Below are positions 19,274-53,509 of a DNA stretch of 64,000 nt, piece by piece (within the stretch, counting starts at the first letter, position 1; every line of letters starts with the position of its first letter). The stretch spans positions 124,001-188,000 of IMG/VR virus record IMGVR_UViG_3300047548_001236, one strand, 5' to 3'. The position numbers and the translations under genes were made by a program. The notes beneath the pieces were generated by a model. That model saw only the letters and a program-made list of their open reading frames with translations. It was not told the DNA's origin and did no database searches.

Positions 19274-19289
19274 GGTATTTATAAATACC
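19274..19289. promoter_or_regulatory. Palindromic back-to-back T4-type late promoters (GGTATTTATAAATACC)
   Basis: Perfect 16-bp palindrome between divergent genes. It contains TATAAATA on + (19280-19287) and on - (19283-19276). Confidence 0.75.
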
Positions 19290-22865: not shown

Positions 22866-23177
22866 ATGGCGATAGTATACACCTGGAAGATACTTCAAAT
22901 GGATAGAAACGTAGCTGACGACGGTGTTGTCGTTGCCCATTGGAGCTGCTTAGGTAAAGACGAAGTAACGGAAAATACAGACAGGGTGTACGGTTCTGTA
23001 TCGTTCACCCCAAATCCTGAAAGTCCCGATTTCATCCCATACGAAAACCTCACAGAAGAAATTGTTCTAGGATGGTTGTGGAACGGTAAAATCGACAAGC
23101 AGGAATATGAAAATGTTGTTGCTGCAACAATCCAAACGCTGAACAACCCTCCAACCGTATCAGGGCTCCCCTGGTAA
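22866..23177 (+). CDS. Putative tail fibre assembly/accessory protein
   Basis: 103 aa, YTWKI...FIPYENLTEEIVLGWL...GLPW. AAGGAG RBS. Lies directly after a fibre gene. Confidence 0.55.
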   Translation: MAIVYTWKILQMDRNVADDGVVVAHWSCLGKDEVTENTDRVYGSVSFTPNPESPDFIPYENLTEEIVLGWLWNGKIDKQEYENVVAATIQTLNNPPTVSGLPW

Positions 23178-23239: not shown

Positions 23240-24511
23240 ATGACGGATACACTTATCAAACTGCGTAGAAGCGCAGTTCCTGGAAAAATACCATCAGATG
23301 CACAACTGCAGCTGGGTGAGGTCGCCATCAACACATATGATGGTAAGATGTTCTTCAAGCAATCGTCGACGTCGAACACAATCCTCCAAGTCGCAACAAC
23401 GTCTCTAAATTTAAGCGATTTTGCAAGCACCACCTCTGCACAGCTTGCTAGTATCATCAGCGATGAGATCGGTACTGGATCTCTCGTTTTTTCAAATGCA
23501 CCCACGCTAGTAACACCTGTCATTAACGGTAACACAACATTCGACAGTGGAACGCTGTTTATTGATTCGGTCAATAATAGAGTCGGTGTTGGAACTATAT
23601 CTCCCACACAACAATTTGAAGCGACTACCGGTAAATTTTCCAACGTCATCCTTGGTACAGACAGCGCTGATGCAAGCAAACGGTTGTCGATATTTTATGA
23701 TCCTGGTGTTCCCGGTGCAGTAATAGACGCTCCCAGCAACAGATTATTGATTCGTACGTTCGGTTCTGAAAGAATGAGAGTCGAGCAGACCGGATTCGTT
23801 GGAATAGGTAACACGGCACCGTCTGAAAGACTTCATGTTGACGGTAATATCAGACTTTCGGGAGCTGTTGTTGATTATGTCGGTTCTAAAGGAACGCTAG
23901 GACAGGTCCTCACATCTGACGGTTCAAAATCATACTGGGCTGACCCAACTGGCGGTGGTAGCGGTGGTATTGCTACAGCTTCACAATCAATTGTTCGCGA
24001 TATATTTACTGGCAACTCTGCTGCTTCGAGCTACACTCTTTCTACTACACCAATAGCAGAACGTTTTGTTATAGTTACCATAAACGGTATTGTTCAGCAA
24101 GATGCTGCATATAGTGTTGCAGGGACTTCGCTTGTTTTCGATGAGCCGCTTGCAAACACAGACGTGGTCGAGGCAAGAACGTTTGTTCCATACAACCCAT
24201 TTATGACGGATGCGTCTGCGACATTTGCCAACACATCGCCTAGTCAAGTTTTAGATACCTTTGACTCAACTTTGTATAGAACAGCTAAGTACCTGGTACA
24301 AATCGCCAACACGTCTTCCTATCAAGCGGCTGAGGTGTTGTTGATTCACGATGGTTCACAGGTATTCATTACTGAATATGCTCAACTGGCAACAGGAACG
24401 TCTCTTGGTGTAATCGACGCCGACATATCAGGTGGAAATGTCAGACTGCTTGTCAACCCATCATTTCCAAACGTCACGGCAAAATCAATCCGTTATAGCA
24501 TAGGTGTATGA
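23240..24511 (+). CDS. Tail fibre-like protein
   Basis: IKLRRSAVPGKIP...GEVAINTYDGK N-terminus, VGIGNTAPSERLHV repeats, and a YRTAKYLVQ...EVLLIHDG C-terminal domain. Confidence 0.75.
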   Translation: MTDTLIKLRRSAVPGKIPSDAQLQLGEVAINTYDGKMFFKQSSTSNTILQVATTSLNLSDFASTTSAQLASIISDEIGTGSLVFSNAPTLVTPVINGNTTFDSGTLFIDSVNNRVGVGTISPTQQFEATTGKFSNVILGTDSADASKRLSIFYDPGVPGAVIDAPSNRLLIRTFGSERMRVEQTGFVGIGNTAPSERLHVDGNIRLSGAVVDYVGSKGTLGQVLTSDGSKSYWADPTGGGSGGIATASQSIVRDIFTGNSAASSYTLSTTPIAERFVIVTINGIVQQDAAYSVAGTSLVFDEPLANTDVVEARTFVPYNPFMTDASATFANTSPSQVLDTFDSTLYRTAKYLVQIANTSSYQAAEVLLIHDGSQVFITEYAQLATGTSLGVIDADISGGNVRLLVNPSFPNVTAKSIRYSIGV

Positions 24512-24512
24512 C

Positions 24513-25484
24513 ATGACTACAAAAGTTAAACTAAGCAACTTGTCTCAAGAAGTGCTCGCAGGAGTTGGAGGTGGATCTGGCGGAAACGGAACATCTTCTG
24601 TAGACTTCCATAATATCGGCGGTGGCGTTGAAGTTACACACCGCTACATCGGAGCATATGACGCTTGTTTTTGGGATGCTACAGACGGGCTTTATAAAAG
24701 CGGGTTAAACTTAGATAATGCTACTAGTTTATTCAATACTGCTGAAGATCGACTAGCAAGCGTAAGTGGTATTTACCCTATTGTTGGCTTAACAAGAAAC
24801 GAAGCAAGGTTGATGGCAGCAAATAACGGGACAGGATGGAGACAGTTAGATTTTACACTAGCATCTGCCATTCAGCTACTTTATCTCGTAGAGTATCAAA
24901 CATTCTTTAGTCAAAATGTGTTAGGAGCAGGTAACACTAATGGAAGTTATATAGCAAGCAGTAGCAACCAAACAGACAGTCCACACACTATAGCAGGCGC
25001 TGGAAATGTGTTGGGTAACAGCAGTACCAATATTACAACAGGCGCAGGTGTAAATGCTAAACCTGGTACAAGTTTTATGAAGTATCGTGGAATCGAGAAC
25101 TTTTACGGTAATTGTTGGAATTGGGTTGACGGTCTAAACATTAATATAGGGACAGCCGGTACAGCATTCTATACCAACAATAGAGCAGATTTTATTGATG
25201 ACGTTTCAACAAATATGATTCTGTTAGCAAACAATATTGCAACCTCTTCTGGATTTATTCGCAATATTAATACAGGCAATCTGGGATTCTTACCGACTGA
25301 CACTGTGGGTGCGTCAAGTACAACTTATATAACTGATCAAGCATTTTTGACAACTTCATTAAACCGTGTCGCCCATCTCGGTGGTCTTGCGAATTCTGGT
25401 GTGGATGCTGGGGTTTTCTGCTGGGATCTGTCTAATGATTCGTCGCTTCGGCTTCGGTGTTTCGGTGCACGCGCCTGCTTCTAA
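24513..25484 (+). CDS. DGR target protein 1 (C-type lectin/FGE-like adhesin domain, Mtd-like)
   Basis: GIENFYGNCWNWVDG motif and a C-terminal VR (LGG...AGVF.W.L....R.R.FGARACF). Start at 24513 preferred because of the AGGTG RBS. Confidence 0.9.
   Translation: MTTKVKLSNLSQEVLAGVGGGSGGNGTSSVDFHNIGGGVEVTHRYIGAYDACFWDATDGLYKSGLNLDNATSLFNTAEDRLASVSGIYPIVGLTRNEARLMAANNGTGWRQLDFTLASAIQLLYLVEYQTFFSQNVLGAGNTNGSYIASSSNQTDSPHTIAGAGNVLGNSSTNITTGAGVNAKPGTSFMKYRGIENFYGNCWNWVDGLNINIGTAGTAFYTNNRADFIDDVSTNMILLANNIATSSGFIRNINTGNLGFLPTDTVGASSTTYITDQAFLTTSLNRVAHLGGLANSGVDAGVFCWDLSNDSSLRLRCFGARACF
25369..25475 (+). repeat. Variable repeat VR1
   Basis: Aligns ungapped to 27111-27217 over 107 bp with 19 mismatches, 18 of them at TR adenines (the exception is GTC to GTT). 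Confidence 0.95.
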
Positions 25485-25533
25485 ACAGATGCAGACAACG
25501 ATCTGAAAGATCGTTGTCCGTGTATAGAAGCAG
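25475..25533 (+). other. IMH region plus nested hairpin after VR1
   Basis: Inner stem GACAACGATCT-GAA-AGATCGTTGTC (25494-25518). Outer stem CTGCTTCTA (25475-25483) pairs with TAGAAGCAG (25525-25533). Confidence 0.85.
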
Positions 25534-25552
25534 ATAAATAAAAGGAAAACAA

Positions 25553-25804
25553 ATGAAAAGCTACAGTCTACATCAACAACCAACATACAGCCCAAGTGGC
25601 AAGGAACTTAGGATTAATTTCAACCATCAATTAGTTGAAACAAGTAATGAATGGGAAGAAACATCGAGTATGCGGGTTTGTGATCAGATTCTGTTGTCTG
25701 TTACTGCTACTAGAGAACAGATTATAGACGCAATCAACCTAATCGATCCATCACAAGCCGAAACATTAGCAGACGGTTGGTTTAGACAAGAGGAAAAATT
25801 ATGA
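25553..25804 (+). CDS. Small protein between the DGR targets, homologous to 28374-28610
   Basis: GATAAATA (25533-25540) and AAGGA RBS upstream. LRINFNHQLVE resembles IRVHWNHEQVE. Confidence 0.75.
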   Translation: MKSYSLHQQPTYSPSGKELRINFNHQLVETSNEWEETSSMRVCDQILLSVTATREQIIDAINLIDPSQAETLADGWFRQEEKL

Positions 25805-26991
25805 ATGTAAGAATAGGCCCAGAAAATCGAACCCTTCTTAATCTAGGTTGGAATCAAGTAAACGATACCTATACACCAACAACAACTAGAAATACAGTGA
25901 GTGCAGTTCATCTCAGAATGCGCCGTTGTTTGCTCAATTTGAATGGTACAGTCAACTACTATCTTGATCCAAATGATAGTACCAAGAAAGCTGACGGGAC
26001 ACCTTCTGTTCTCACGGGTGCTGATGGATATGTGATGGTGGAAATACCCAAGTTTTCATTCAAATACACATACGCCGCAGGGCAGTATTTCTGGGAAGTA
26101 GTGATCGGTAAACGAGATGGCTACACACTTCACCCGGCATTCATAAAGGATGGGGTTGAAGTAGAGAACCGTTATATCGGTGCCTATGATGCCTGCGTAT
26201 GGGATGCGACTACCGATACATATATCAGCGGTCTAAACTTAGATAACTCAGATACATTGATTGACATTGCTGTTGATAGATTGGCAAGTGTATCCGGTGT
26301 TTATCCAATGGTTGGTCAGACTCGAGCAAGATTTAGATCACTTGCTGATAACAATGGTACGGGTTGGAGGCAGTTAGATTTTTGGCTAGCGAGCGCTGTT
26401 CAGCTCCTCTATCTGATTGAGTATGATACTTTTAAAAGCCAGCAAGTGTTAGGATTGGGTAATGTCAGTTCATCATATTTGACGTCTAGCAGCAATCAGT
26501 CGGATAGCCCTCACACTATCGCTGGTGCATCAAATGCGTTAGGTAATCGATCTACCAACGGAACGCAACCAAGCGCTGGTGCAAGACCTGGGATTGCTTA
26601 TATGAGTTATCGTGGAATCGAGAACTTTTACGGTAATTGTTGGAATTGGGTTGACGGGTTTAACCTGATTAATTTTGTAGCTTGGGTCACTAACAATAGA
26701 ACAAACTTTGTCGATGATGTAACAACAAATATGACTAATATCGGTACACTCGCAAGCACATCTGGATTTGCAACAGATATTGTCAATTATGGTGGTACAT
26801 TTTTACCGAGTACCGTGGGTGGGTCATCTACTACACGATTGACAGACCAACTATTTGTATCTTCTGGTAACCGTGTCGCCCGTCTCGGTGGTAGTGCGAA
26901 TCTTGGTGTGGATGCTGGGGTCTTCTGCTGGGCTCTGAATGATGATTCGTCGTATCGGAATCGGCCGATCGGTGCGCGCGCCTGCTTCTAA
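25801..26991 (+). CDS. DGR target protein 2 (C-type lectin/FGE-like adhesin domain)
   Basis: VMVEIPKF, LHPAF, YIGAYDA and GIENFYGNCWNWVDG motifs, with a C-terminal VR. Confidence 0.9.
   Translation: MNVRIGPENRTLLNLGWNQVNDTYTPTTTRNTVSAVHLRMRRCLLNLNGTVNYYLDPNDSTKKADGTPSVLTGADGYVMVEIPKFSFKYTYAAGQYFWEVVIGKRDGYTLHPAFIKDGVEVENRYIGAYDACVWDATTDTYISGLNLDNSDTLIDIAVDRLASVSGVYPMVGQTRARFRSLADNNGTGWRQLDFWLASAVQLLYLIEYDTFKSQQVLGLGNVSSSYLTSSSNQSDSPHTIAGASNALGNRSTNGTQPSAGARPGIAYMSYRGIENFYGNCWNWVDGFNLINFVAWVTNNRTNFVDDVTTNMTNIGTLASTSGFATDIVNYGGTFLPSTVGGSSTTRLTDQLFVSSGNRVARLGGSANLGVDAGVFCWALNDDSSYRNRPIGARACF
26876..26982 (+). repeat. Variable repeat VR2
   Basis: Aligns ungapped to the TR over 107 bp with 16 mismatches, 15 at TR adenines (the exception is the T of AAT to CCG). 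Confidence 0.95.
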
Positions 26992-27040
26992 ACAGATGCA
27001 GTCAACGATCTGAAAGATCGTTGTCCGTGTATAGAAGCAG
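26982..27040 (+). other. IMH region plus nested hairpin after VR2
   Basis: Same element as after VR1 with a single substitution. Inner stem CAACGATCT-GAA-AGATCGTTG (27003-27023). Confidence 0.85.
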
Positions 27041-27048
27041 TATAAATA
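27041..27048 (+). promoter_or_regulatory. T4-type late promoter upstream of TR/RT
   Basis: Exact TATAAATA in the intergenic gap. Confidence 0.8.
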
Positions 27049-27073
27049 AAACATGTGAAAGGAGAATACACTA

Positions 27074-27331
27074 ATGATTAGAATAGGGGTGCAGTATCAA
27101 TGCCCAGTATTCACCCATCTCGGTGGTAATGCGAATAATGGTGTGAATGCTGGGGTCTTCTACTGGAATCTGAATAATGATTCGTCGAATCGGAATCGGA
27201 ATATCGGTGCACACGCCAATCCCCAAAGCAATGCTGTAAAGATACTGACTCCTCACCTCTTGGTGAAATCTGTCGCCACAAAAAGTTTGGTAGGGAAACC
27301 GAAGAACTTGGCTGGGGGATGCAGGAAATGA
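27074..27331 (+). CDS. TR-containing ORF (85 aa), possibly translated and coupled to the RT
   Basis: AAGGAG RBS about 9 nt upstream. The TR is in frame. Its TGA (27329-27331) overlaps the RT ATG (27328-27330). Confidence 0.5.
   Translation: MIRIGVQYQCPVFTHLGGNANNGVNAGVFYWNLNNDSSNRNRNIGAHANPQSNAVKILTPHLLVKSVATKSLVGKPKNLAGGCRK
27111..27217 (+). repeat. DGR template repeat (TR)
   Basis: Contains 27 adenines, including 10 in-frame AAT codons. It is the adenine-retaining copy of VR1 and VR2, and diverges after ...CACGCC (IMH*). Confidence 0.95.
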
Positions 27332-28377
27332 AACGATACGGGAATCTATTTGAAAAAATCTGCGACTTAGATAATCTTCTACTTGCACATCAGAACGCTA
27401 GATTAGGAAAATCTAGCTATAAAGAAGTTCAAATGGTAGACAAAAATCCACGTTATTATGCTGAAAAACTAAGACATCTTTTACAATCTAAGACGTTTAC
27501 AACAAGTAAGTATCAAATATTCTGGAAAGATTGTGGAACTAAACAGAGATACATCTACAAGTTACCTTACTGGCCAGATAGAATAGTTCAACATGCTCTG
27601 ATGCAAATTGTAGAACCGATATTCACAAGGACTTTAATCCGTGATACTTTCCAGTCGATAAAAGAGAGAGGTACACACGATTGTAGAAAACGGCTTCAAA
27701 AAGCAATAGAAAATATCAAAGAAGACTCATATGTTTTAAACTTTGACATTAAGCAGTTTTACCCATCTGTCGACAATCAACTACTAAAAGTGTTAGTGAG
27801 ACGTAAAATCAAATGTAAAGATACACTTTGGTTGCTTGATGATATTATTGACTCAACAAAAGGTCTCCCTGTAGGAAACTACAGTAGCCAGATTTTAGGT
27901 AATTTATACTTATCTGCTATGGATCACTATGCAAAAGAAACTCTAGGAATCAAACACTATTTTAGATATTGCGATGATATAGTTATTCTCGCTGACACAA
28001 AAGAGCAATGTAATTTATATAAGAAAAAACTATTTAATATAGTCGATCGGTTAAAGTTAACTGTGAAAAGCAACTGGCAGGTTTTCCCGTTTTCAACAAG
28101 AGCGGTAGATTTTATTGGTTGGGTATTTTCGAAAAGCCGGGTGCGGCTTAGAAAGAGAACTGCGCGTAGATTCACAAATAAAGTTATGATGATAAAGAAG
28201 AATCACAGGCGAATATCACCGGCTCATGCTGTATGCTCTATTATGTCCTACTGGGGTCAGTTTAAACACATTAATTCAAAAAGACTCTGGAAACAGCACA
28301 TAGATAAAGAATTTATGAATAAGACAGATAAATTTTTCGATAAACAAAATCTATTTAGAGAGGTGATCTGCAAATGA
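27328..28377 (+). CDS. DGR reverse transcriptase
   Basis: MKRYGNLFEKI start, DRIVQHAL, FDIKQFYPSVD, the DGR-type GLPVGNYSSQ motif, catalytic RYCDD and DFIGW. No maturase or endonuclease domain. Confidence 0.95.
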   Translation: MKRYGNLFEKICDLDNLLLAHQNARLGKSSYKEVQMVDKNPRYYAEKLRHLLQSKTFTTSKYQIFWKDCGTKQRYIYKLPYWPDRIVQHALMQIVEPIFTRTLIRDTFQSIKERGTHDCRKRLQKAIENIKEDSYVLNFDIKQFYPSVDNQLLKVLVRRKIKCKDTLWLLDDIIDSTKGLPVGNYSSQILGNLYLSAMDHYAKETLGIKHYFRYCDDIVILADTKEQCNLYKKKLFNIVDRLKLTVKSNWQVFPFSTRAVDFIGWVFSKSRVRLRKRTARRFTNKVMMIKKNHRRISPAHAVCSIMSYWGQFKHINSKRLWKQHIDKEFMNKTDKFFDKQNLFREVICK

Positions 28378-28610
28378 TTAAAGTTCATTCAGACAACAAG
28401 CTAGAAACATTTCAAATACTAGGACCAATCATCCGAGTTCATTGGAACCACGAACAAGTTGAACAAGAAGAAATGGATAATGGTAAAAGAGTGACTTGGA
28501 TTGCCGATGAGATAGTTGTACCGTCAGATATCTCTACAGAAGAGTTGATAAAAACACTCGAGCAATACAATGCTCCTGTGAATGAAATAATGCAAGAGTG
28601 GAATAAATAA
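28374..28610 (+). CDS. Small protein coupled to the RT, homologous to 25553-25804
   Basis: ATGA overlap with the RT stop. IRVHWNHEQVE...ADEIVV...STEELIKTL...W pattern. Confidence 0.75.
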   Translation: MIKVHSDNKLETFQILGPIIRVHWNHEQVEQEEMDNGKRVTWIADEIVVPSDISTEELIKTLEQYNAPVNEIMQEWNK

Positions 28611-28639
28611 ACAAAAGGCGCCATTAGGGAGAGTGATCT

Positions 28640-31600
28640 ATGGCAAACGATAAAAGATTTGTAGCCAAGAATGGTCTAACTACTCAAAATATTTTGTTTG
28701 TAGATAATATCCAGTCTGCAAATAACACCGTTTTGATAGAAATGAAACCAACGAACGAGTTAGTCGTCGCTACAGATGAGCAAGCACTGGTTGTGTCAAA
28801 TACACCAGGTTCTATCCTCACAGTCAACGATTCTACTGGCATACCTACTATTCAGGTAACCGATTACGGTAATATTCTTGTTGGTGATCTTGTAGATAAC
28901 GGTGTAGATAAAATCCAAGCTAGTGGGAGTTTGTTTTCTGAAACCATAAAAACTTCCAAACTATCATTCAAGACTCAGCAAGGTTCAGATGTAATATCAT
29001 CTGAACTAACTAGTAACACTGAAGTTACGTTTATTGGTGATAGCAACGATATACTGTCAATGGGATTAGACCCTAATAGTTCACTTTTTACAGTCAACGA
29101 TATTTCTGGTGTGCCTTCGATTGAAGTTGTTGACGATGGTACTGTAAGATTAGCAGAAATTATCGGGAATGTCGGCGTTGGATTAGCGTCGCCGTCAGAA
29201 AAATTGCATGTGCAAGGAAATGTAAGAGCAACGTCGTTGATGGCTGCTAACGGTTCTGCTGCTTCCCCAGCCTTTGATTTTGCTGCTGACCCTAACACTG
29301 GTATGTTTTCTGCTGGAGCTGATACGATTGGGTTCTCTACGAACGGCACGATAGCGGCAGCTATTACATCGACAGGTAACCTGCGTCTGTTCAACACTGC
29401 CGGAACCTTCTACACGGAAATCTCCAACCAACCGACAGCTAATAACACTCTGACACTACCGGCCACAGGCAACGTGACCCTTGTGTCGGGAACGATGGTT
29501 CCAACTACTGGTACTGGCGCGACTGGAACGTGGGGTATCTCAGTAACTGGTAATGCGGCAACTGCAACCACATTACAAACCTCAAGAAATATCAATGGTA
29601 CACTTTTCAACGGTTCTGCTGATATTACGATACCGCGTGTAAGAGCAGCTGACGATCGTACTGTCGCACCGTCGGATTTCTTAACAGCGTATACTACTTT
29701 TGGATTTGGTTCATGGAATAACAATAATACCTCCCCCTATAGCGATTATTTAGTACTTCGCAACTATACAGACTCTACTGGCGGAAATGATAATATGCTA
29801 TCGTTCCGTAAAGATACGTTAGGCATAAGACTGTGGCAAGCACCATATGGCAATAACTCACCTTTCTCAACTTTTAAAGATGTAGCTTGGACAGACGGTA
29901 CTAATGCAACAGGCACTTGGAACATTAGCGTTTCTACGGCAAACAATGCTACCAATCTCAACGGGCAATCAGCTTCATATTATCTTGATTGGACCAATGT
30001 AACCAATAAGCCAGATCCTGTAATAACCCTGGCGGGCGATCTTACTGGTTCTGTTACTTTGACTGATTTAGGATCAGGCACACTCACTGCAACAATTGCC
30101 GCTAATTCAGTTGCTCTTGGCGCAGATACTACAGGTAATTATGTTGCTTCCCTTATACAGGGAACTGGTGTAACTATTACAAATAATACGGGTGAATCAG
30201 CTACACCGACGATTGCTATTGGACAAGACGTAAGTATATCTGCAAATGTCCAATTTGCAAATATGATTGTTTCTGGTGATCTAACAGTTAACGGTACGAC
30301 TACAACAATCAACACCACAAATCTTACCACAAAAGATACACTGATTGAACTTAACAGTGGAGCAAATACTAGTATCAATGATTCTGGTATTCTAATCAAT
30401 CGAGGATCCACTGGGGCTAATGCTTTTATTGGTTGGAATGAAACAACAGATAAATTTGTTGTAGGTACGACAACCGCAACTGGGAATACAACAGGTAACC
30501 TAGCTGTAACAGCTGGAACCTTAGTAGCTGCGTCATTTGAAGGTTCTTTGAGTGGTAATGCAACCACCTCAACTACCGCCAATAATATCGCTGGTGGAGT
30601 CGCTGGAGGGGTCCCTTATCAAAGTGGAGTTGGAACAACCGCTATAACAGCCGCAGGTACTGCCGGCCAGGTTTTTGTTTCTGCGGGTTCAAGTGCCCCA
30701 TCATGGCAGACGTTGACTCTTGAGAATATTCCTGATGCGTGGGTTAAACGTAGTGTCAAAGCAGCCACGACTGCAAATATTACTTTATCGGGTGCACAAA
30801 CTATCGACGGTGTTTCGGTAGTCGCAGGGGATAGAGTTCTTGTAAAGAACCAAACTGCTGCCGCTGAAAATGGTATCTATGTCGTAGCAGCGGGTGCTTG
30901 GACAAGAGCAGCTGATGCTAATATTTCATCAGAATTAGCAGCAGCAACTGTAGGTATTGACCAAGGTACTACAAACGGCGGTAAAACTTATGATACCGAT
31001 TTTAAGGGCACTGATACTCTTGGTACAACTGCAATGTCTTGGTACAGAGTATTAGATGCTGCTTCTATAGGTTCCGAAGTTCAAGCATATGATGCCGGTC
31101 TGCAATCCATTGCAGGTCTAACCACCGCGGCAGATCGTATGATATATACAACTGCAGCAGATACATATGCTGTTACTACATTAACAGCTGCTGGTAGAGC
31201 AATTCTAGACGATGCTGATGCTGCAGCCCAGCGCACTACACTTGGACTTGGAACGGCCAATAACGTCACCTTTGCAACTGTAACAGCTACAACATCTTTG
31301 ACTTCTCCATTACTGACTAATGCTGGTACTCTATCACTTTCAGCTACTGGTTCAAACGTCATTGCTGCATCAACAAATGGTTCAGAACGTTTACGTATTA
31401 CAGACACCGGTAGAGTAGGTATTGGCACTACAATTCCTACAACATCACTTCATGTAACTGCGACTCCCCCAGCAAGCATCCCTACTGCTGGGGCTGCTTC
31501 TTCACACGTAGCCATCGGAACAAATTCTTATGGGACGTCGATTGGTACCCTATCAAGCGGCAGAGGTTATATCCAGCAACAAAGATTTGATGGTAATACG

Positions 31601-31999
31601 GCTGTTTATGATCTTTTGCTCAATCCGAACGGCGGTAACGTAGGTATTGGCACAACAAATCCTTCGACAATTCTTCACGCAAATGGCGAAATAACTGCTA
31701 CGGACTTTAATACAACATCAGACCTAAATGTCAAAGAAAATATTGAAATTATACCAGATGCTGTTGTAAAAGTTTCTCAAATAAATGGTGTGACATTTAA
31801 TTTTAAAGCCGATAATACCAAGCAGAGACACGCAGGTGTTATTGCACAGGATGTAGAAAAGGTACTTCCTGAAGCCGTTAAAGAAATGTCGGATGGAATT
31901 AAACACGTTGCTTACGGAAACTTGATAGGTCTGCTTGTAGAAGCCATAAAAGATCAACAAAAACAAATAGATGAGCTAAAAGCTCTTATCAATAAATAA
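28640..31999 (+). CDS. Long tail fibre with C-terminal S74-like chaperone
   Basis: MANDKRFVAKNGL N-terminus, a TITLSGAQTIDGV...GDRVLVKNQ module, and C-terminal SDLNVKENI...GVIAQDVE...VAYGNL. Confidence 0.85.
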   Translation: MANDKRFVAKNGLTTQNILFVDNIQSANNTVLIEMKPTNELVVATDEQALVVSNTPGSILTVNDSTGIPTIQVTDYGNILVGDLVDNGVDKIQASGSLFSETIKTSKLSFKTQQGSDVISSELTSNTEVTFIGDSNDILSMGLDPNSSLFTVNDISGVPSIEVVDDGTVRLAEIIGNVGVGLASPSEKLHVQGNVRATSLMAANGSAASPAFDFAADPNTGMFSAGADTIGFSTNGTIAAAITSTGNLRLFNTAGTFYTEISNQPTANNTLTLPATGNVTLVSGTMVPTTGTGATGTWGISVTGNAATATTLQTSRNINGTLFNGSADITIPRVRAADDRTVAPSDFLTAYTTFGFGSWNNNNTSPYSDYLVLRNYTDSTGGNDNMLSFRKDTLGIRLWQAPYGNNSPFSTFKDVAWTDGTNATGTWNISVSTANNATNLNGQSASYYLDWTNVTNKPDPVITLAGDLTGSVTLTDLGSGTLTATIAANSVALGADTTGNYVASLIQGTGVTITNNTGESATPTIAIGQDVSISANVQFANMIVSGDLTVNGTTTTINTTNLTTKDTLIELNSGANTSINDSGILINRGSTGANAFIGWNETTDKFVVGTTTATGNTTGNLAVTAGTLVAASFEGSLSGNATTSTTANNIAGGVAGGVPYQSGVGTTAITAAGTAGQVFVSAGSSAPSWQTLTLENIPDAWVKRSVKAATTANITLSGAQTIDGVSVVAGDRVLVKNQTAAAENGIYVVAAGAWTRAADANISSELAAATVGIDQGTTNGGKTYDTDFKGTDTLGTTAMSWYRVLDAASIGSEVQAYDAGLQSIAGLTTAADRMIYTTAADTYAVTTLTAAGRAILDDADAAAQRTTLGLGTANNVTFATVTATTSLTSPLLTNAGTLSLSATGSNVIAASTNGSERLRITDTGRVGIGTTIPTTSLHVTATPPASIPTAGAASSHVAIGTNSYGTSIGTLSSGRGYIQQQRFDGNTAVYDLLLNPNGGNVGIGTTNPSTILHANGEITATDFNTTSDLNVKENIEIIPDAVVKVSQINGVTFNFKADNTKQRHAGVIAQDVEKVLPEAVKEMSDGIKHVAYGNLIGLLVEAIKDQQKQIDELKALINK

Positions 32000-35822: not shown

Positions 35823-35830
35823 TATAAATA
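35823..35830 (+). promoter_or_regulatory. T4-type late promoter for the neck operon
   Basis: TATAAATA 27 nt before the gp13 ATG. Confidence 0.85.
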
Positions 35831-52123: not shown

Positions 52124-53509
52124 ATGTCAAACAAAATTCCCATACCACCCAGAGAAGAATTAGTAGAGTTGTATCAGCAGCCAGCGATTTCAATTTCTGA
52201 AATTGCTCGGAGATATAATACAAGCCAACCGACTGTACGCAAGTGGCTTATCGACTATCAAATTTCTAGGAAAACACAACGAGATGCTTCTCGTGAAGTC
52301 AATGCAGCTAAGCGGCCCAACCTACCTGATTTTGAGACGTTTGAAACAGATTTCTATACACTATCCATCGACGAATTAGAAAAGAAGTATGTCACGGGAC
52401 AATCAACACTATATCAATGGTGCGATGTTTTTGGGATGGAACCAAAAAACCACAGTCAAAGCTGTATTTTAGGTAAAGCGAAACAGTTTCAGCACATAAG
52501 GTATTCCACAGAAGTAGTAGAGACGACTTACAACGAATCGGGCAATCTATCTATTGCTGCTGAAAAGTTGGGCGTCTCATACGGATATATGAGGTTTCTT
52601 TGTAAACAGCATGGGATTGAAGTATTAAACCCTAAACGGTCCAAGCGAGAAAACGACCTTTATGAAAAGTGCGTCAGCATCGCTCCAAAAGACCAGTGGA
52701 AAATCGGCGATCGATCTGCAATAGCCCCTTTCGAGCTCGATATATATAATATCGATAAAGGACTCGCCGTTGAATATTGTGGGAGTTACTGGCACTCCGA
52801 AACGTATGGAAAGAAAGACCGCAACTACCACGCACGTAAACTACAAATGTGTAGAGAAAAAGGGGTCAAACTCATCACCGTGTTCGAGTTCGATGATATG
52901 GAGAAAATAACCGACCTCCTCCGTACCTTGCTTGGTGTCTCTTTGCCGCTTAATGCACGAGAAGCTAGAGTTGTCGACGTTGAACCGTCAGCCGCTGCAG
53001 CTTTCTATCAACGCCACCATCTATCGGGTTCCGTCGGAGCTTCCACACATTTAGGATTGGTTTACGACAAAACAAACGAGATTGTAATGATGGCGTCGTT
53101 TGGCAAAGCCAGAAACGGAAAACACACGTACGAGTGTATGAGAATGGCATCGGACGGTCGTTATAGGGTGAGGGGCGGAGCTTCCAAATTGTTCCACCAC
53201 TTTGATCGACGTATGAACGTTGGCGATACGTTGATCACATACGCAGACCTTCGCTTTGGAGAGGGTAATACATATCTGCACTGCGGATTTGAACGAGCTG
53301 CAGATACGAAGCCAAACTACTGGTATTTCCACAAGAATGCACCGCACATCAAACACTCGCGTGTGGCGTTTCAGAAGCATAAATTACCAAACGTGCTTAG
53401 TCGGTATGACGACAACCTTAGCGAGTACGATAATATGCTACTGAACGGGTATGATCGCATATGGGACTGTGGCAATGCAGTCTACATAAAACAAAAGGGG
53501 AGCATTTAG
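52124..53509 (+). CDS. Hef-like putative homing endonuclease (HTH repeats, DUF559/Vsr-like nuclease, GNAT/Mom-like C-terminus)
   Basis: ELDIY...AVEYCGSYWHS...KLQMCREKGVKLITVFE, then HHLSG, GGASKL, TYADLRF, PNYWY and IWDCG motifs. Confidence 0.7.
   Translation: MSNKIPIPPREELVELYQQPAISISEIARRYNTSQPTVRKWLIDYQISRKTQRDASREVNAAKRPNLPDFETFETDFYTLSIDELEKKYVTGQSTLYQWCDVFGMEPKNHSQSCILGKAKQFQHIRYSTEVVETTYNESGNLSIAAEKLGVSYGYMRFLCKQHGIEVLNPKRSKRENDLYEKCVSIAPKDQWKIGDRSAIAPFELDIYNIDKGLAVEYCGSYWHSETYGKKDRNYHARKLQMCREKGVKLITVFEFDDMEKITDLLRTLLGVSLPLNAREARVVDVEPSAAAAFYQRHHLSGSVGASTHLGLVYDKTNEIVMMASFGKARNGKHTYECMRMASDGRYRVRGGASKLFHHFDRRMNVGDTLITYADLRFGEGNTYLHCGFERAADTKPNYWYFHKNAPHIKHSRVAFQKHKLPNVLSRYDDNLSEYDNMLLNGYDRIWDCGNAVYIKQKGSI

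What the first reader, a model, noticed from the sequence alone, without database searches (positions are those of the whole stretch)
27041..27331. TR and RT wired into the T4 late programme, with the TR inside an ORF translationally coupled to the RT
The order is TATAAATA (27041), AAGGAG RBS, ATG 27074, in-frame TR, then a TGA overlapping the RT ATG (ATGA, 27328-27331). This implies the template RNA and RT are made only during late, replication-coupled transcription, when many genome copies are available as targets. Ribosome passage over the TR may control RT synthesis or RNA folding. It would be a regulatory domestication of a DGR by a lytic phage.
Basis: partly seen in the sequence, partly recalled or inferred. 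Interest (0 to 1): 0.7.

Follow-up and report, generated by a model that had tools for sequence, protein, structure and literature searches.

The report
DGR template repeat inside late-gene ORF
A T4-like jumbo phage carries an ordinary diversity-generating retroelement (DGR), but its template RNA is laid out like a normal late gene (late promoter, ribosome-binding site, ATG, open frame ending on the reverse-transcriptase start codon); related retroelements often share this layout, which suggests that ribosomes read across a template RNA usually assumed to be untranslated.

Summary
The window comes from a 283-kb T4-like phage that encodes gp55 and gp45 homologues, and TATAAATA is enriched upstream of its structural genes. 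The locus is a canonical DGR with two tail-protein targets, adenine-specific TR/VR mismatches, a post-VR hairpin and an RT.

Three points are new. (1) The 3' half of the "TR-ORF" overlies a known structured RNA, Rfam RT-17, and a long-range helix brackets the TR. (2) The peptide is not conserved (4 synonymous / 8 non-synonymous changes, against 16/1 in the RT), so any selection acts on RNA and on openness, not on a protein. (3) The layout is not a T4 invention. In 153 related DGRs from phages, bacteria and archaea the TR frame runs open to the RT start in 41%, against about 13% for the control frames. In the window's own clade 11 of 16 loci have an SD and start codon in front of the TR. The trait is labile, and a phylogenetically controlled test found no frame preservation.

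Only the late promoter and a new AAGGAG-ATG are phage-specific, and that promoter belongs to a module duplicated after both target genes.

Verdict: observation confirmed, interpretation partly supported. This is a new variant of a known kind; translation is inferred, not shown.

The parts
24504..25484 (+). DGR target gene 1 (326 aa tail protein); VR1 is at its 3' end (about 25369-25475)
   Evidence: phrog_5302 tail protein, E 5e-50; VR1 differs from the TR almost only at TR adenines
25496..25516 (+). Post-VR1 hairpin CAACGATCT-GAA-AGATCGTTG (9-bp stem)
   Evidence: Read; lies within the exact 34-nt repeat 25500-25533 = 27007-27040; relatives have covarying hairpins right after the target stop codon
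25533..25540 (+). GATAAATA, a late-promoter variant upstream of orf83, homologous to the promoter at 27041
   Evidence: position -13 variants are the commonest deviation in T4 (PMC2988020)
25553..25804 (+). orf83, a small ORF joined by ATGA to target 2; paralogue of orf78
   Evidence: BLASTP E 2e-4; both match the post-RT ORF of L019
25801..26991 (+). DGR target gene 2 (396 aa tail protein); VR2 is at its 3' end (26876-26982) with a GC-rich IMH
   Evidence: phrog_5302, E 4e-84; repeat D1; alignment
27003..27023 (+). Post-VR2 hairpin, identical to the one after VR1
27041..27048 (+). TATAAATA, a T4-type late promoter box followed by AT-rich AAAACA; predicted start site near 27054-27056
   Evidence: gp55 and gp45 homologues; the start site is inferred from the T4 rule of about one helical turn (PMC2988020)
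27059..27064 (+). Shine-Dalgarno AAGGAG, 9 nt before ATG 27074
   Evidence: this signal's predictive value in the genome is given
27074..27331 (+). TR-ORF: an 85-codon open frame covering the TR and the RT-17 RNA; its TGA overlaps the RT ATG
27085..27098 (+). 5' strand of the long-range helix bracketing the TR (AGGGGUGCAGUAUC); lies in codons 4-9 of the TR-ORF
   Evidence: MFE fold; clade consensus pairs GGGG with CCCC/UCCU; flank-to-flank duplex z = -2.95
27111..27217 (+). Template repeat (TR), read in the same frame as the VRs; IMH*-like tail extends to about 27240
27241..27254 (+). 3' strand of the TR-bracketing helix (GAUACUGACUCCUC)
   Evidence: the A27248G change in relatives keeps the pairing (U-A becomes U-G)
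27249..27328 (+). Divergent RT-17 RNA (Rfam RF03020): P1 hairpin CACC-UCUU-GGUG, UGGUAG core, short P2; ends at the RT start codon
   Evidence: cmscan 22.4 bits, full model, below the gathering score of 40.4; 13 of 20 relatives exceed the gathering score at the same position; covariation in P1 and P2
27328..28377 (+). DGR reverse transcriptase (349 aa) with its own SD-like GGGGGA at 27314-27319
   Evidence: PF00078, E 2.5e-15; conserved N-terminus; SD
28374..28610 (+). orf78, a small ORF joined by ATGA to the RT stop; no Avd domain

Best explanation
This is a canonical DGR sitting in the late tail-fibre operon of a T4-like jumbo phage. It has two tail-protein targets, a TR, an RT-17-type structured RNA and an RT. 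A gp55-type late promoter (27041) starts a transcript about 20 nt before ATG 27074. That RNA has two uses. As mRNA, ribosomes load at AAGGAG/ATG, read through the TR and the RT-17 RNA in the VR frame, make an 85-aa peptide with no function of its own, and terminate on the RT start (ATGA). There they can reinitiate, or they can clear structure from the RT's own SD. As template, the RNA folds: a helix brackets the TR and RT-17 forms P1 and P2, and the RT then copies the TR into adenine-mutagenised cDNA that homes to VR1 and VR2. Translation and folding use the same nucleotides, so they exclude each other. The TR-ORF therefore acts as a ribosome-delivery leader. It links RT synthesis to the template transcript and keeps a 330-nt stretch inside a polycistronic late mRNA translated. 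Shown: the sequence anatomy, DGR identity, promoter-motif statistics, RT-17 homology and covariation, no constraint on the peptide, and enrichment of the open frame among relatives. Inferred: the transcription start and its timing, actual translation, reinitiation, and the mRNA/template competition.
For: DGR. Late programme. Gene-like start signals: AAGGAG-N6-10-ATG precedes an ORF of at least 60 aa at 81% of 62 sites, against 20% for random ATGs. TATAAATA..RGGAG..ATG occurs 8 times, always before an ORF. ATGA or TAATG overlaps make up 12 of 36 junctions. Comparative: the TR frame is open to the RT start in 63 of 153 loci, against 20 and 22 for the control frames and 19.9 from shuffles; an in-frame ATG lies upstream of the TR in 42/63 open against 27/90 closed loci. 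The RT-17 core is read as GGT-AGx in 45 of 77 loci, and as the TAG-creating register in 14. In the window's clade 11 of 16 loci have an SD and start codon; 8 run to the RT start and 3 end at the UAG of the RT-17 core. Close relatives keep the promoter, SD, ATG, frame and ATGA. RNA constraint, not peptide constraint. A metatranscriptome contig spans 27094-27373. The native BPP-1 operon lacks a clear RBS before brt (PMC12875486), so RT translation downstream of the template RNA is a real problem for DGRs.
Against: There is no direct evidence of translation or of a transcription start. For this window alone the spacer's openness is not significant (p = 0.18, two of three frames open). The trait is labile, with 18-35 changes on the RT tree, and the window's clade is split 8 open / 8 closed. 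Among independent neighbour pairs whose linker lengths differ, only 5 of 20 differ by a multiple of 3. The RT has its own SD in both open and closed loci, so coupling is not required. In relatives the conserved GGGG 'SD' is also one strand of the TR-bracketing helix, so its conservation may be structural. The window reads the RT-17 core in a different register from most open loci. The RNA contig could be DNA carry-over.
Confidence: 0.55

Rival explanations
1. The TR-ORF is an untranslated by-product. The TR part is open because it copies the coding VR. The spacer is open by chance plus RNA sequence constraint, since RT-17 has stop-free registers. The purine-rich element upstream of the TR is an RNA-structure strand, not a working SD. 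The RT is translated from its own SD.
For: Window spacer p = 0.18 and two frames open. Trait is labile. No 3n preference in independent pairs. RT has its own SD. GGGG pairs with CCCC/UCCU. Peptide is unconstrained. Wu et al. state that 'the TR is not translated in vivo' (PMC5758913).
Against: The control frames of the same sequences are open three times less often. The register bias is 45/18/14. In this window the SD (AAGGAG 27059-64) is separate from the helix strand (27085-98) and matches the genome's gene-start grammar. ATG starts are enriched in open loci. The whole signal set survives in 93-95% relatives, even though a 1-nt deletion occurred in the leader.
Confidence: 0.3
2. The promoter is not a DGR-specific acquisition. 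It is one of the regularly spaced late promoters of the tail-fibre operon. It belongs to the 3' flank duplicated after both target genes, and its main job is to drive orf78 and the downstream fibre genes. The TR-RT unit simply lies behind it.
For: The repeated module (34 nt plus (T)ATAAATAAAA) follows both VRs. NATAAATAAA precedes every unit at 25533, 27041, 28602, 31991 and 35823. orf83, behind copy 1, is a paralogue of orf78, behind the RT. Related DGRs in other phages lack the motif.
Against: It is the only perfect-consensus box among the four units from 25533 to 31991 (the next perfect box, at 35823, heads the unit after the fibre genes), and it sits 25 nt from the TR-ORF ATG. Relative to clade members, about 60 nt carrying promoter, SD and ATG have been added between the hairpin and the GGGG element. 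This rival is compatible with the best explanation and contradicts only the 'domestication' wording.
Confidence: 0.5
3. The TR-ORF encodes a functional small protein, for example a basic accessory factor that replaces the missing Avd.
For: No Avd domain was found in this or related loci. The C-terminal tail is Lys/Arg-rich. The ORF recurs.
Against: There are 8 non-synonymous and 4 synonymous changes against a 93% relative, compared with 1/16 in the RT. pN/pS is 0.5-1.3 with low pS. The register through the RT-17 core differs between lineages, so the C-terminal peptides are unrelated. The end point varies.
Confidence: 0.05

Closest known systems
Bordetella phage BPP-1 DGR (mtd-VR / avd / TR / spacer RNA / brt)
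   Same: Adenine-specific TR-to-VR transfer; IMH and hairpin downstream of the VR; a structured RNA between TR and RT (RT-10 in BPP-1, PMC5737381); upstream and downstream RNA flanks around the TR; a tail-fibre target.
   Different: No Avd gene was detected. The RNA motif is RT-17, not RT-10. There are two targets. The TR and spacer lie inside an ORF with its own SD and ATG that ends on the RT start, whereas BPP-1 has no clear RBS before brt (PMC12875486). The host is a lytic-type T4-like jumbo phage with a gp55-type promoter.
Rfam RF03020 RT-17 RNA motif (Weinberg et al. 2017, PMC5737381)
   Same: Same position immediately 5' of an RT gene; same P1 hairpin, UGGUAG..CGAA core and A-rich tail; relatives score 41-76 bits.
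   Different: The window's copy scores only 22.4 bits, because the apical part of P2 is reduced to 5 nt. The discoverers did not assign RT-17 to DGRs; here it lies between the TR and a DGR RT in every locus examined. In many loci it is overlapped by an open reading frame.
T4 late gene expression (gp55 / gp33 / gp45, TATAAATA)
   Same: Exact 8-bp box, AT-rich downstream segment, typical distance to SD and ATG, gp55 and gp45 homologues, ATGA gene junctions.
   Different: No gp33 homologue was detected with T4 gp33. The phage is only distantly T4-like (major head protein 66% identical to the phiM12 / Pelagibacter-phage type). The 'gene' behind the promoter is a retroelement template.
Leader-ORF or uORF translational coupling in bacteria (reviewed in PMC12548453), and RT autoregulation at its own RBS in group II introns (LtrA-DIVa; recalled from memory)
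   Same: A short upstream ORF with an unconserved product ends at or overlaps the downstream start. An RNA element bound by the RT lies over the RT's translation-initiation region.
   Different: Here the leader ORF contains the element's own template and priming RNA. No binding or coupling has been measured.

Membership tests
Diversity-generating retroelement | Reverse transcriptase of the DGR clade adjacent to the TR | tested here: met
   PF00078, E 2.5e-15; 40-52% identical to RTs that all sit next to TR/VR pairs
Diversity-generating retroelement | TR/VR repeat pair whose mismatches fall at TR adenines, with the VR at the 3' end of a target gene | tested here: met
   VR1: 18 of 19 mismatches are at TR adenines. 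VR2: 19 of 27 over a 130-nt stretch that includes the diverged IMH tail; alignment
Diversity-generating retroelement | IMH / GC-rich 3' boundary and hairpin downstream of the VR (Guo et al., PMC3240598) | tested here: met
   GCGCGCC against ACACGCC at the boundary; identical 9-bp hairpins after both VRs; function not tested
Diversity-generating retroelement | Accessory protein Avd (frequent, not universal) | tested here: not met
   No Avd-type Pfam hit in orf78, orf83 or nine post-RT ORFs of relatives
Diversity-generating retroelement | Ongoing diversification in the population | tested here: inconclusive
   The source-run contigs break at both VRs, which fits hypervariability, but contigs drop variants and holes prove nothing
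Rfam RF03020 RT-17 RNA | Score at or above the family gathering threshold (40.4 bits) | tested here: not met
   22.4 bits, E 0.05-0.66
Rfam RF03020 RT-17 RNA | Homologous position and conserved stems with covariation | tested here: met
   13 of 20 relatives exceed the gathering score at the same place; P1 and P2 covary in the window's clade alignment, which includes the window
T4-type late promoter | TATAAATA box with AT-rich downstream segment at gene-proximal distance; motif enriched in the genome | tested here: met
T4-type late promoter | Phage encodes gp55 sigma, gp45 clamp and gp33 co-activator | tested here: inconclusive
   gp55 E 5e-18 and gp45 E 1e-25 were found. gp33 was not found with T4 gp33, which is a small and divergent protein
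T4-type late promoter | Late, replication-dependent 5' end at the predicted position | not testable with these tools
   Only metagenomic contigs are available; X13 RNA contigs cover 27094-27373 but give no 5' end
Translationally coupled gene pair | Upstream ORF with SD and start codon whose stop overlaps or abuts the downstream start | tested here: met
   AAGGAG-N9-ATG; ATGA at 27328-31
Translationally coupled gene pair | Downstream gene depends on upstream translation (no independent RBS, or an RBS masked by structure) | tested here: not met
   The RT has GGGGGA 8 nt upstream (dG -8.4). Single-sequence folds pair it weakly but are not significant (z = -0.65)
Translationally coupled gene pair | Upstream ORF is actually translated | not testable with these tools
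   No ribosome profiling or proteomics is available

The most novel reading that the evidence does not exclude
In a large part of the RT-17 class of DGRs the template RNA is a translated leader ORF. Ribosome transit across the TR and RT-17 and folding of the same RNA into the reverse-transcription substrate exclude each other. This forms a switch that sets how much RT is made per template, and it lets RT binding at RT-17 feed back on RT synthesis. The T4-like phage has placed this switch behind a replication-coupled late promoter.
Probability: 0.25. Interest if true: 0.75.

Novelty: new variant of a known kind. Interest (0 to 1): 0.55.

Why it matters
DGR template repeats are treated as non-coding; Wu et al. 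write that "the TR is not translated in vivo" (PMC5758913). How the RT is translated downstream of a long structured RNA is unresolved even in BPP-1, where adding an RBS raised activity 100-fold (PMC12875486). A recurrent ORF, equipped with a start codon, that runs across the TR and its priming RNA to the RT start gives a concrete and testable answer for one DGR class. It also matters for engineering DGRs as targeted mutagenesis tools, because expression context, RT dosage and template folding all affect performance. The analysis assigns the orphan Rfam motif RT-17 to DGRs. It documents a DGR with C-type-lectin-like tail targets in a T4-like jumbo phage; a 2021 jumbo-phage survey reported no such diversified lectin domains (PMC7824862).

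Tried and rejected
(1) An RT tree of 23 loci gave a clean open/closed split, which I first read as a clade-wide conserved trait. A tree of 149 loci showed this was a sampling artefact, because the trait is patchy.
(2) The 3-nt periodicity of the TR-to-RT-17 linker looked strong in raw counts. It failed in phylogenetically independent pairs, where only 5 of 20 differences were multiples of 3. I do not claim general frame preservation.
(3) I asked whether open loci lack an RT SD. They do not; both groups have one.
(4) Single-sequence folds of the leader and spacer are not better than shuffles (z = -1.36 and -0.65). Only the alignment-based structure is used.
(5) Megablast of the cassette against GenBank phages found nothing. 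The best RT in that collection is 44% identical.
(6) Pfam found no Avd in post-RT ORFs.
(7) T4 gp33 found no homologue.
(8) The idea that the TR-RT unit was inserted just behind an orf78-type start rests only on a shared AATGATTA, which is too weak to use.
(9) I considered Rho-polarity protection as the main driver. I ranked it below coupling because open loci also occur in archaeal MAGs, and archaea lack Rho as far as I know (the Rho point is from memory).
(10) Literature searches pairing DGRs with translational coupling or uORFs, or with T4-like or jumbo phages, returned no relevant paper. The library is incomplete, so this is not proof of absence.

Full report
OBSERVATION. The ORF listing starts the RT ORF at an in-frame ATG at 27319. 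However, every relative begins MKR[YF]G.L[YF], so 27328 is the real start. The TR (27111-27217) lies 235 nt from VR2. Because 235 = 1 mod 3, the TR-ORF reads the TR in the same frame in which the target gene reads its VR. That part of the ORF is therefore open for a trivial reason.

THE PHAGE AND THE PROMOTER. The window is bases 124001-188000 of a 282,855-bp, 45% GC virus record. Its sheath, tube, portal, prohead protease and gp23-type major head protein are T4-like. The head protein is 66% identical to those of phiM12-, Melnitz- and Pelagibacter-phage-type myoviruses. The genome encodes homologues of the late sigma factor gp55 (E 5e-18) and the sliding clamp gp45 (E 1e-25). T4 gp33 found nothing, which is uninformative for so small a protein.

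TATAAATA occurs 11 times in the window against 1.75 expected and 46 times in the genome. It typically lies 18-56 nt upstream of structural-gene starts that have good SDs. Relaxed NATAAATAAA boxes precede each unit of the tail-fibre cluster, at 25533, 27041, 28602, 31991 and 35823. This matches the A(-13)-type variants known in T4 (PMC2988020). Sigma-70-like matches are not enriched. A late promoter at 27041 is therefore a well-founded prediction, but no 5' end has been mapped.

THE DGR. Two tail-protein genes (phrog_5302) end in VRs that differ from the TR almost only at TR adenines. Homology stops at a GC-rich IMH. Each VR is followed by the stop codon, an identical 9-bp hairpin and then (T)ATAAATAAAA. 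This module is 34 nt identical plus the promoter box. The RT carries PF00078. No Avd was found here or in relatives. orf78, behind the RT, and orf83, in front of target 2, are paralogues, and a similar ORF follows the RT of L019.

PEPTIDE OR RNA? Relatives 93-95% identical occur in wastewater, soil and freshwater metagenomes and in one metatranscriptome, which has a contig spanning 27094-27373. They keep the box, SD, ATG, frame and ATGA. The only indel is a 1-nt deletion in the leader. Against that relative the TR-ORF has 4 synonymous and 8 non-synonymous changes (1 and 6 downstream of the TR), while the first 49 RT codons have 16 and 1. Among more distant loci the spacer part of the ORF has pN/pS of 0.5-1.3 with pS of only 0.09-0.42, where the RT has pN/pS of 0.1-0.3 and pS of 0.54-0.81. 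The stretch is therefore conserved as nucleic acid, not as protein.

Rfam explains why. Positions 27249-27328 are a weak, full-length match to RT-17 (22.4 bits against a gathering score of 40.4). Thirteen of 20 relatives exceed the gathering score at exactly this position. Weinberg et al. found the RT-n motifs next to RT genes, placed RT-10 between the TR and brt of BPP-1, and guessed that others serve other DGRs (PMC5737381). RT-17 is evidently one of them.

RNAalifold on the window's 16-member clade supports P1 and P2 with 6-7 double compensatory changes per pair. It adds a long-range helix in which a GGGG upstream of the TR pairs with CCCC/UCCU just 5' of P1. Flank-to-flank duplexes beat shuffles in all 16 loci, with mean z = -2.26. 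In the window the helix is 27085-98 with 27241-54. The changes in the close relative fall in loops, linkers or wobble-compatible positions.

IS THE OPEN FRAME MORE THAN CHANCE? For the window alone it is not: the shuffle p is 0.18 and two of three frames are open. Across relatives it is. In 25 distinct loci the TR frame reaches the RT start in 12, against 0 and 1 for the other frames. In 153 distinct loci from IMG/VR and from bacterial and archaeal genomes the figures are 63, against 20 and 22, with 19.9 expected from shuffles. An in-frame ATG lies upstream of the TR in 42/63 open loci against 27/90 closed loci. The RT-17 core is read as GGT-AGx in 45 of 77 loci, as the TAG-creating register in 14, and in the window's register in 18.

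Two cautions apply. On a 149-tip RT tree the trait needs 18-35 changes, and the window's clade is 8 open to 8 closed; my earlier clean split was a sampling artefact. In addition, among independent neighbour pairs with different linker lengths only 5 of 20 differ by a multiple of 3. The trait is therefore favoured but often lost, mostly through frameshifts.

Within the window's clade, 11 of 16 loci have an SD (TAAGGGGG-like) and a start codon 20-45 nt upstream of the TR. Eight of the 16 loci keep the TR frame open to the RT start, and three end at the UAG of the UGGUAG core 33 nt earlier. In those relatives the SD is also the 5' strand of the bracketing helix. The window instead has a separate, stronger AAGGAG and ATG about 12 nt upstream of that strand, directly behind the late promoter.

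GENOME GRAMMAR. In this genome 81% of AAGGAG-N6-10-ATG sites open an ORF of at least 60 aa, against 20% for random ATGs. TATAAATA..RGGAG..ATG occurs 8 times: before this ORF and before seven ORFs of 205-618 aa. ATGA or TAATG overlaps account for 12 of 36 junctions. To the expression machinery the TR-ORF looks like a late gene.

MECHANISM (inferred). A late transcript starting near 27054 either is translated from 27074 across the TR and RT-17 to the RT start, delivering ribosomes for reinitiation or for unmasking the RT's own SD, or folds into the bracketed-TR/RT-17 substrate for cDNA synthesis. The two states use the same nucleotides. The peptide itself is a by-product. Coupling is not obligatory, and the benefit is probably modest, which fits the trait's lability.

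COMPARISON AND NOVELTY. The DGR, the RT-17 RNA and the late promoter are each known kinds. What I did not find described in the searchable literature is threefold: a start-equipped ORF over the TR and priming RNA that ends on the RT start, as a recurrent feature of a DGR class; the assignment of RT-17 to DGRs; and such a cassette wired to a T4-type late promoter in a jumbo phage. That promoter is shared with the other target gene's flank and probably also drives orf78 and the fibre genes.

Noticed in passing
window 25500-25543 and 27007-27051: An exact 34-nt repeat plus (T)ATAAATAAAA follows both VRs. The IMH, stop codon, hairpin and late promoter therefore form one duplicated module, identical within the genome but diverged at 3 of 20 positions in a 93% relative. 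This suggests concerted evolution or selection on the VR 3' flank.
   Followed up: partly
window 25553-25804 and 28374-28610; L019:1289-1940: orf83 and orf78 are paralogous small proteins, one in front of target 2 and one behind the RT. L019 has the same RT, orf78-like, DUF7936-like order, and DUF7936 (22866-23177) also lies upstream of the window's targets. This may be an accessory or fibre-assembly gene set travelling with this DGR clade.
   Followed up: partly
L028 and 12 other loci among L038-L197: In 13 of 153 related DGRs the TR frame runs into the RT frame with no stop, giving a potential TR-RT fusion reading frame.
   Followed up: no
window 24400-27000 (run X1): Contigs of the probable source sample break at 25112/25496 and at 26657, at or just upstream of the two VRs. 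This is as expected if the VRs are hypervariable in the population, but gaps in contig data prove nothing.
   Followed up: no
window 27250-27308 (run X18): A 6,884-nt contig from a hydrocarbon metagenome shares only the RT-17 stretch, with 4 substitutions and 3 single-base indels (net -1). High-depth matches to the TR core (27117-27181) come from many unrelated organisms, reflecting the conserved lectin-fold VR scaffold.
   Followed up: no
window 52124-53509: A 461-aa HNH/homing-endonuclease-like ORF (phrog_3339, E 3.5e-82) sits directly after the major head protein gene in the structural module.
   Followed up: no
window 19276-19287: Two TATAAATA boxes overlap on opposite strands (TATTTATATAAATA), apparently forming a divergent late-promoter pair between the minus-strand 835-aa ORF and the plus-strand tail-fibre cluster.
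   Followed up: no
L092:1206-1506: In this clade member an AAGGAG-N5-ATG upstream of the TR opens only a two-codon mini-ORF (ATG ACT TAA), yet the TR frame is open into the RT frame. This is a different solution at the same position.
   Followed up: no
L012 / L033 (258,509-bp contig): A second jumbo-sized viral contig carries a related DGR (RT 41% identical). Its VR is on the opposite strand downstream of the RT, and its TR frame is closed.
   Followed up: no
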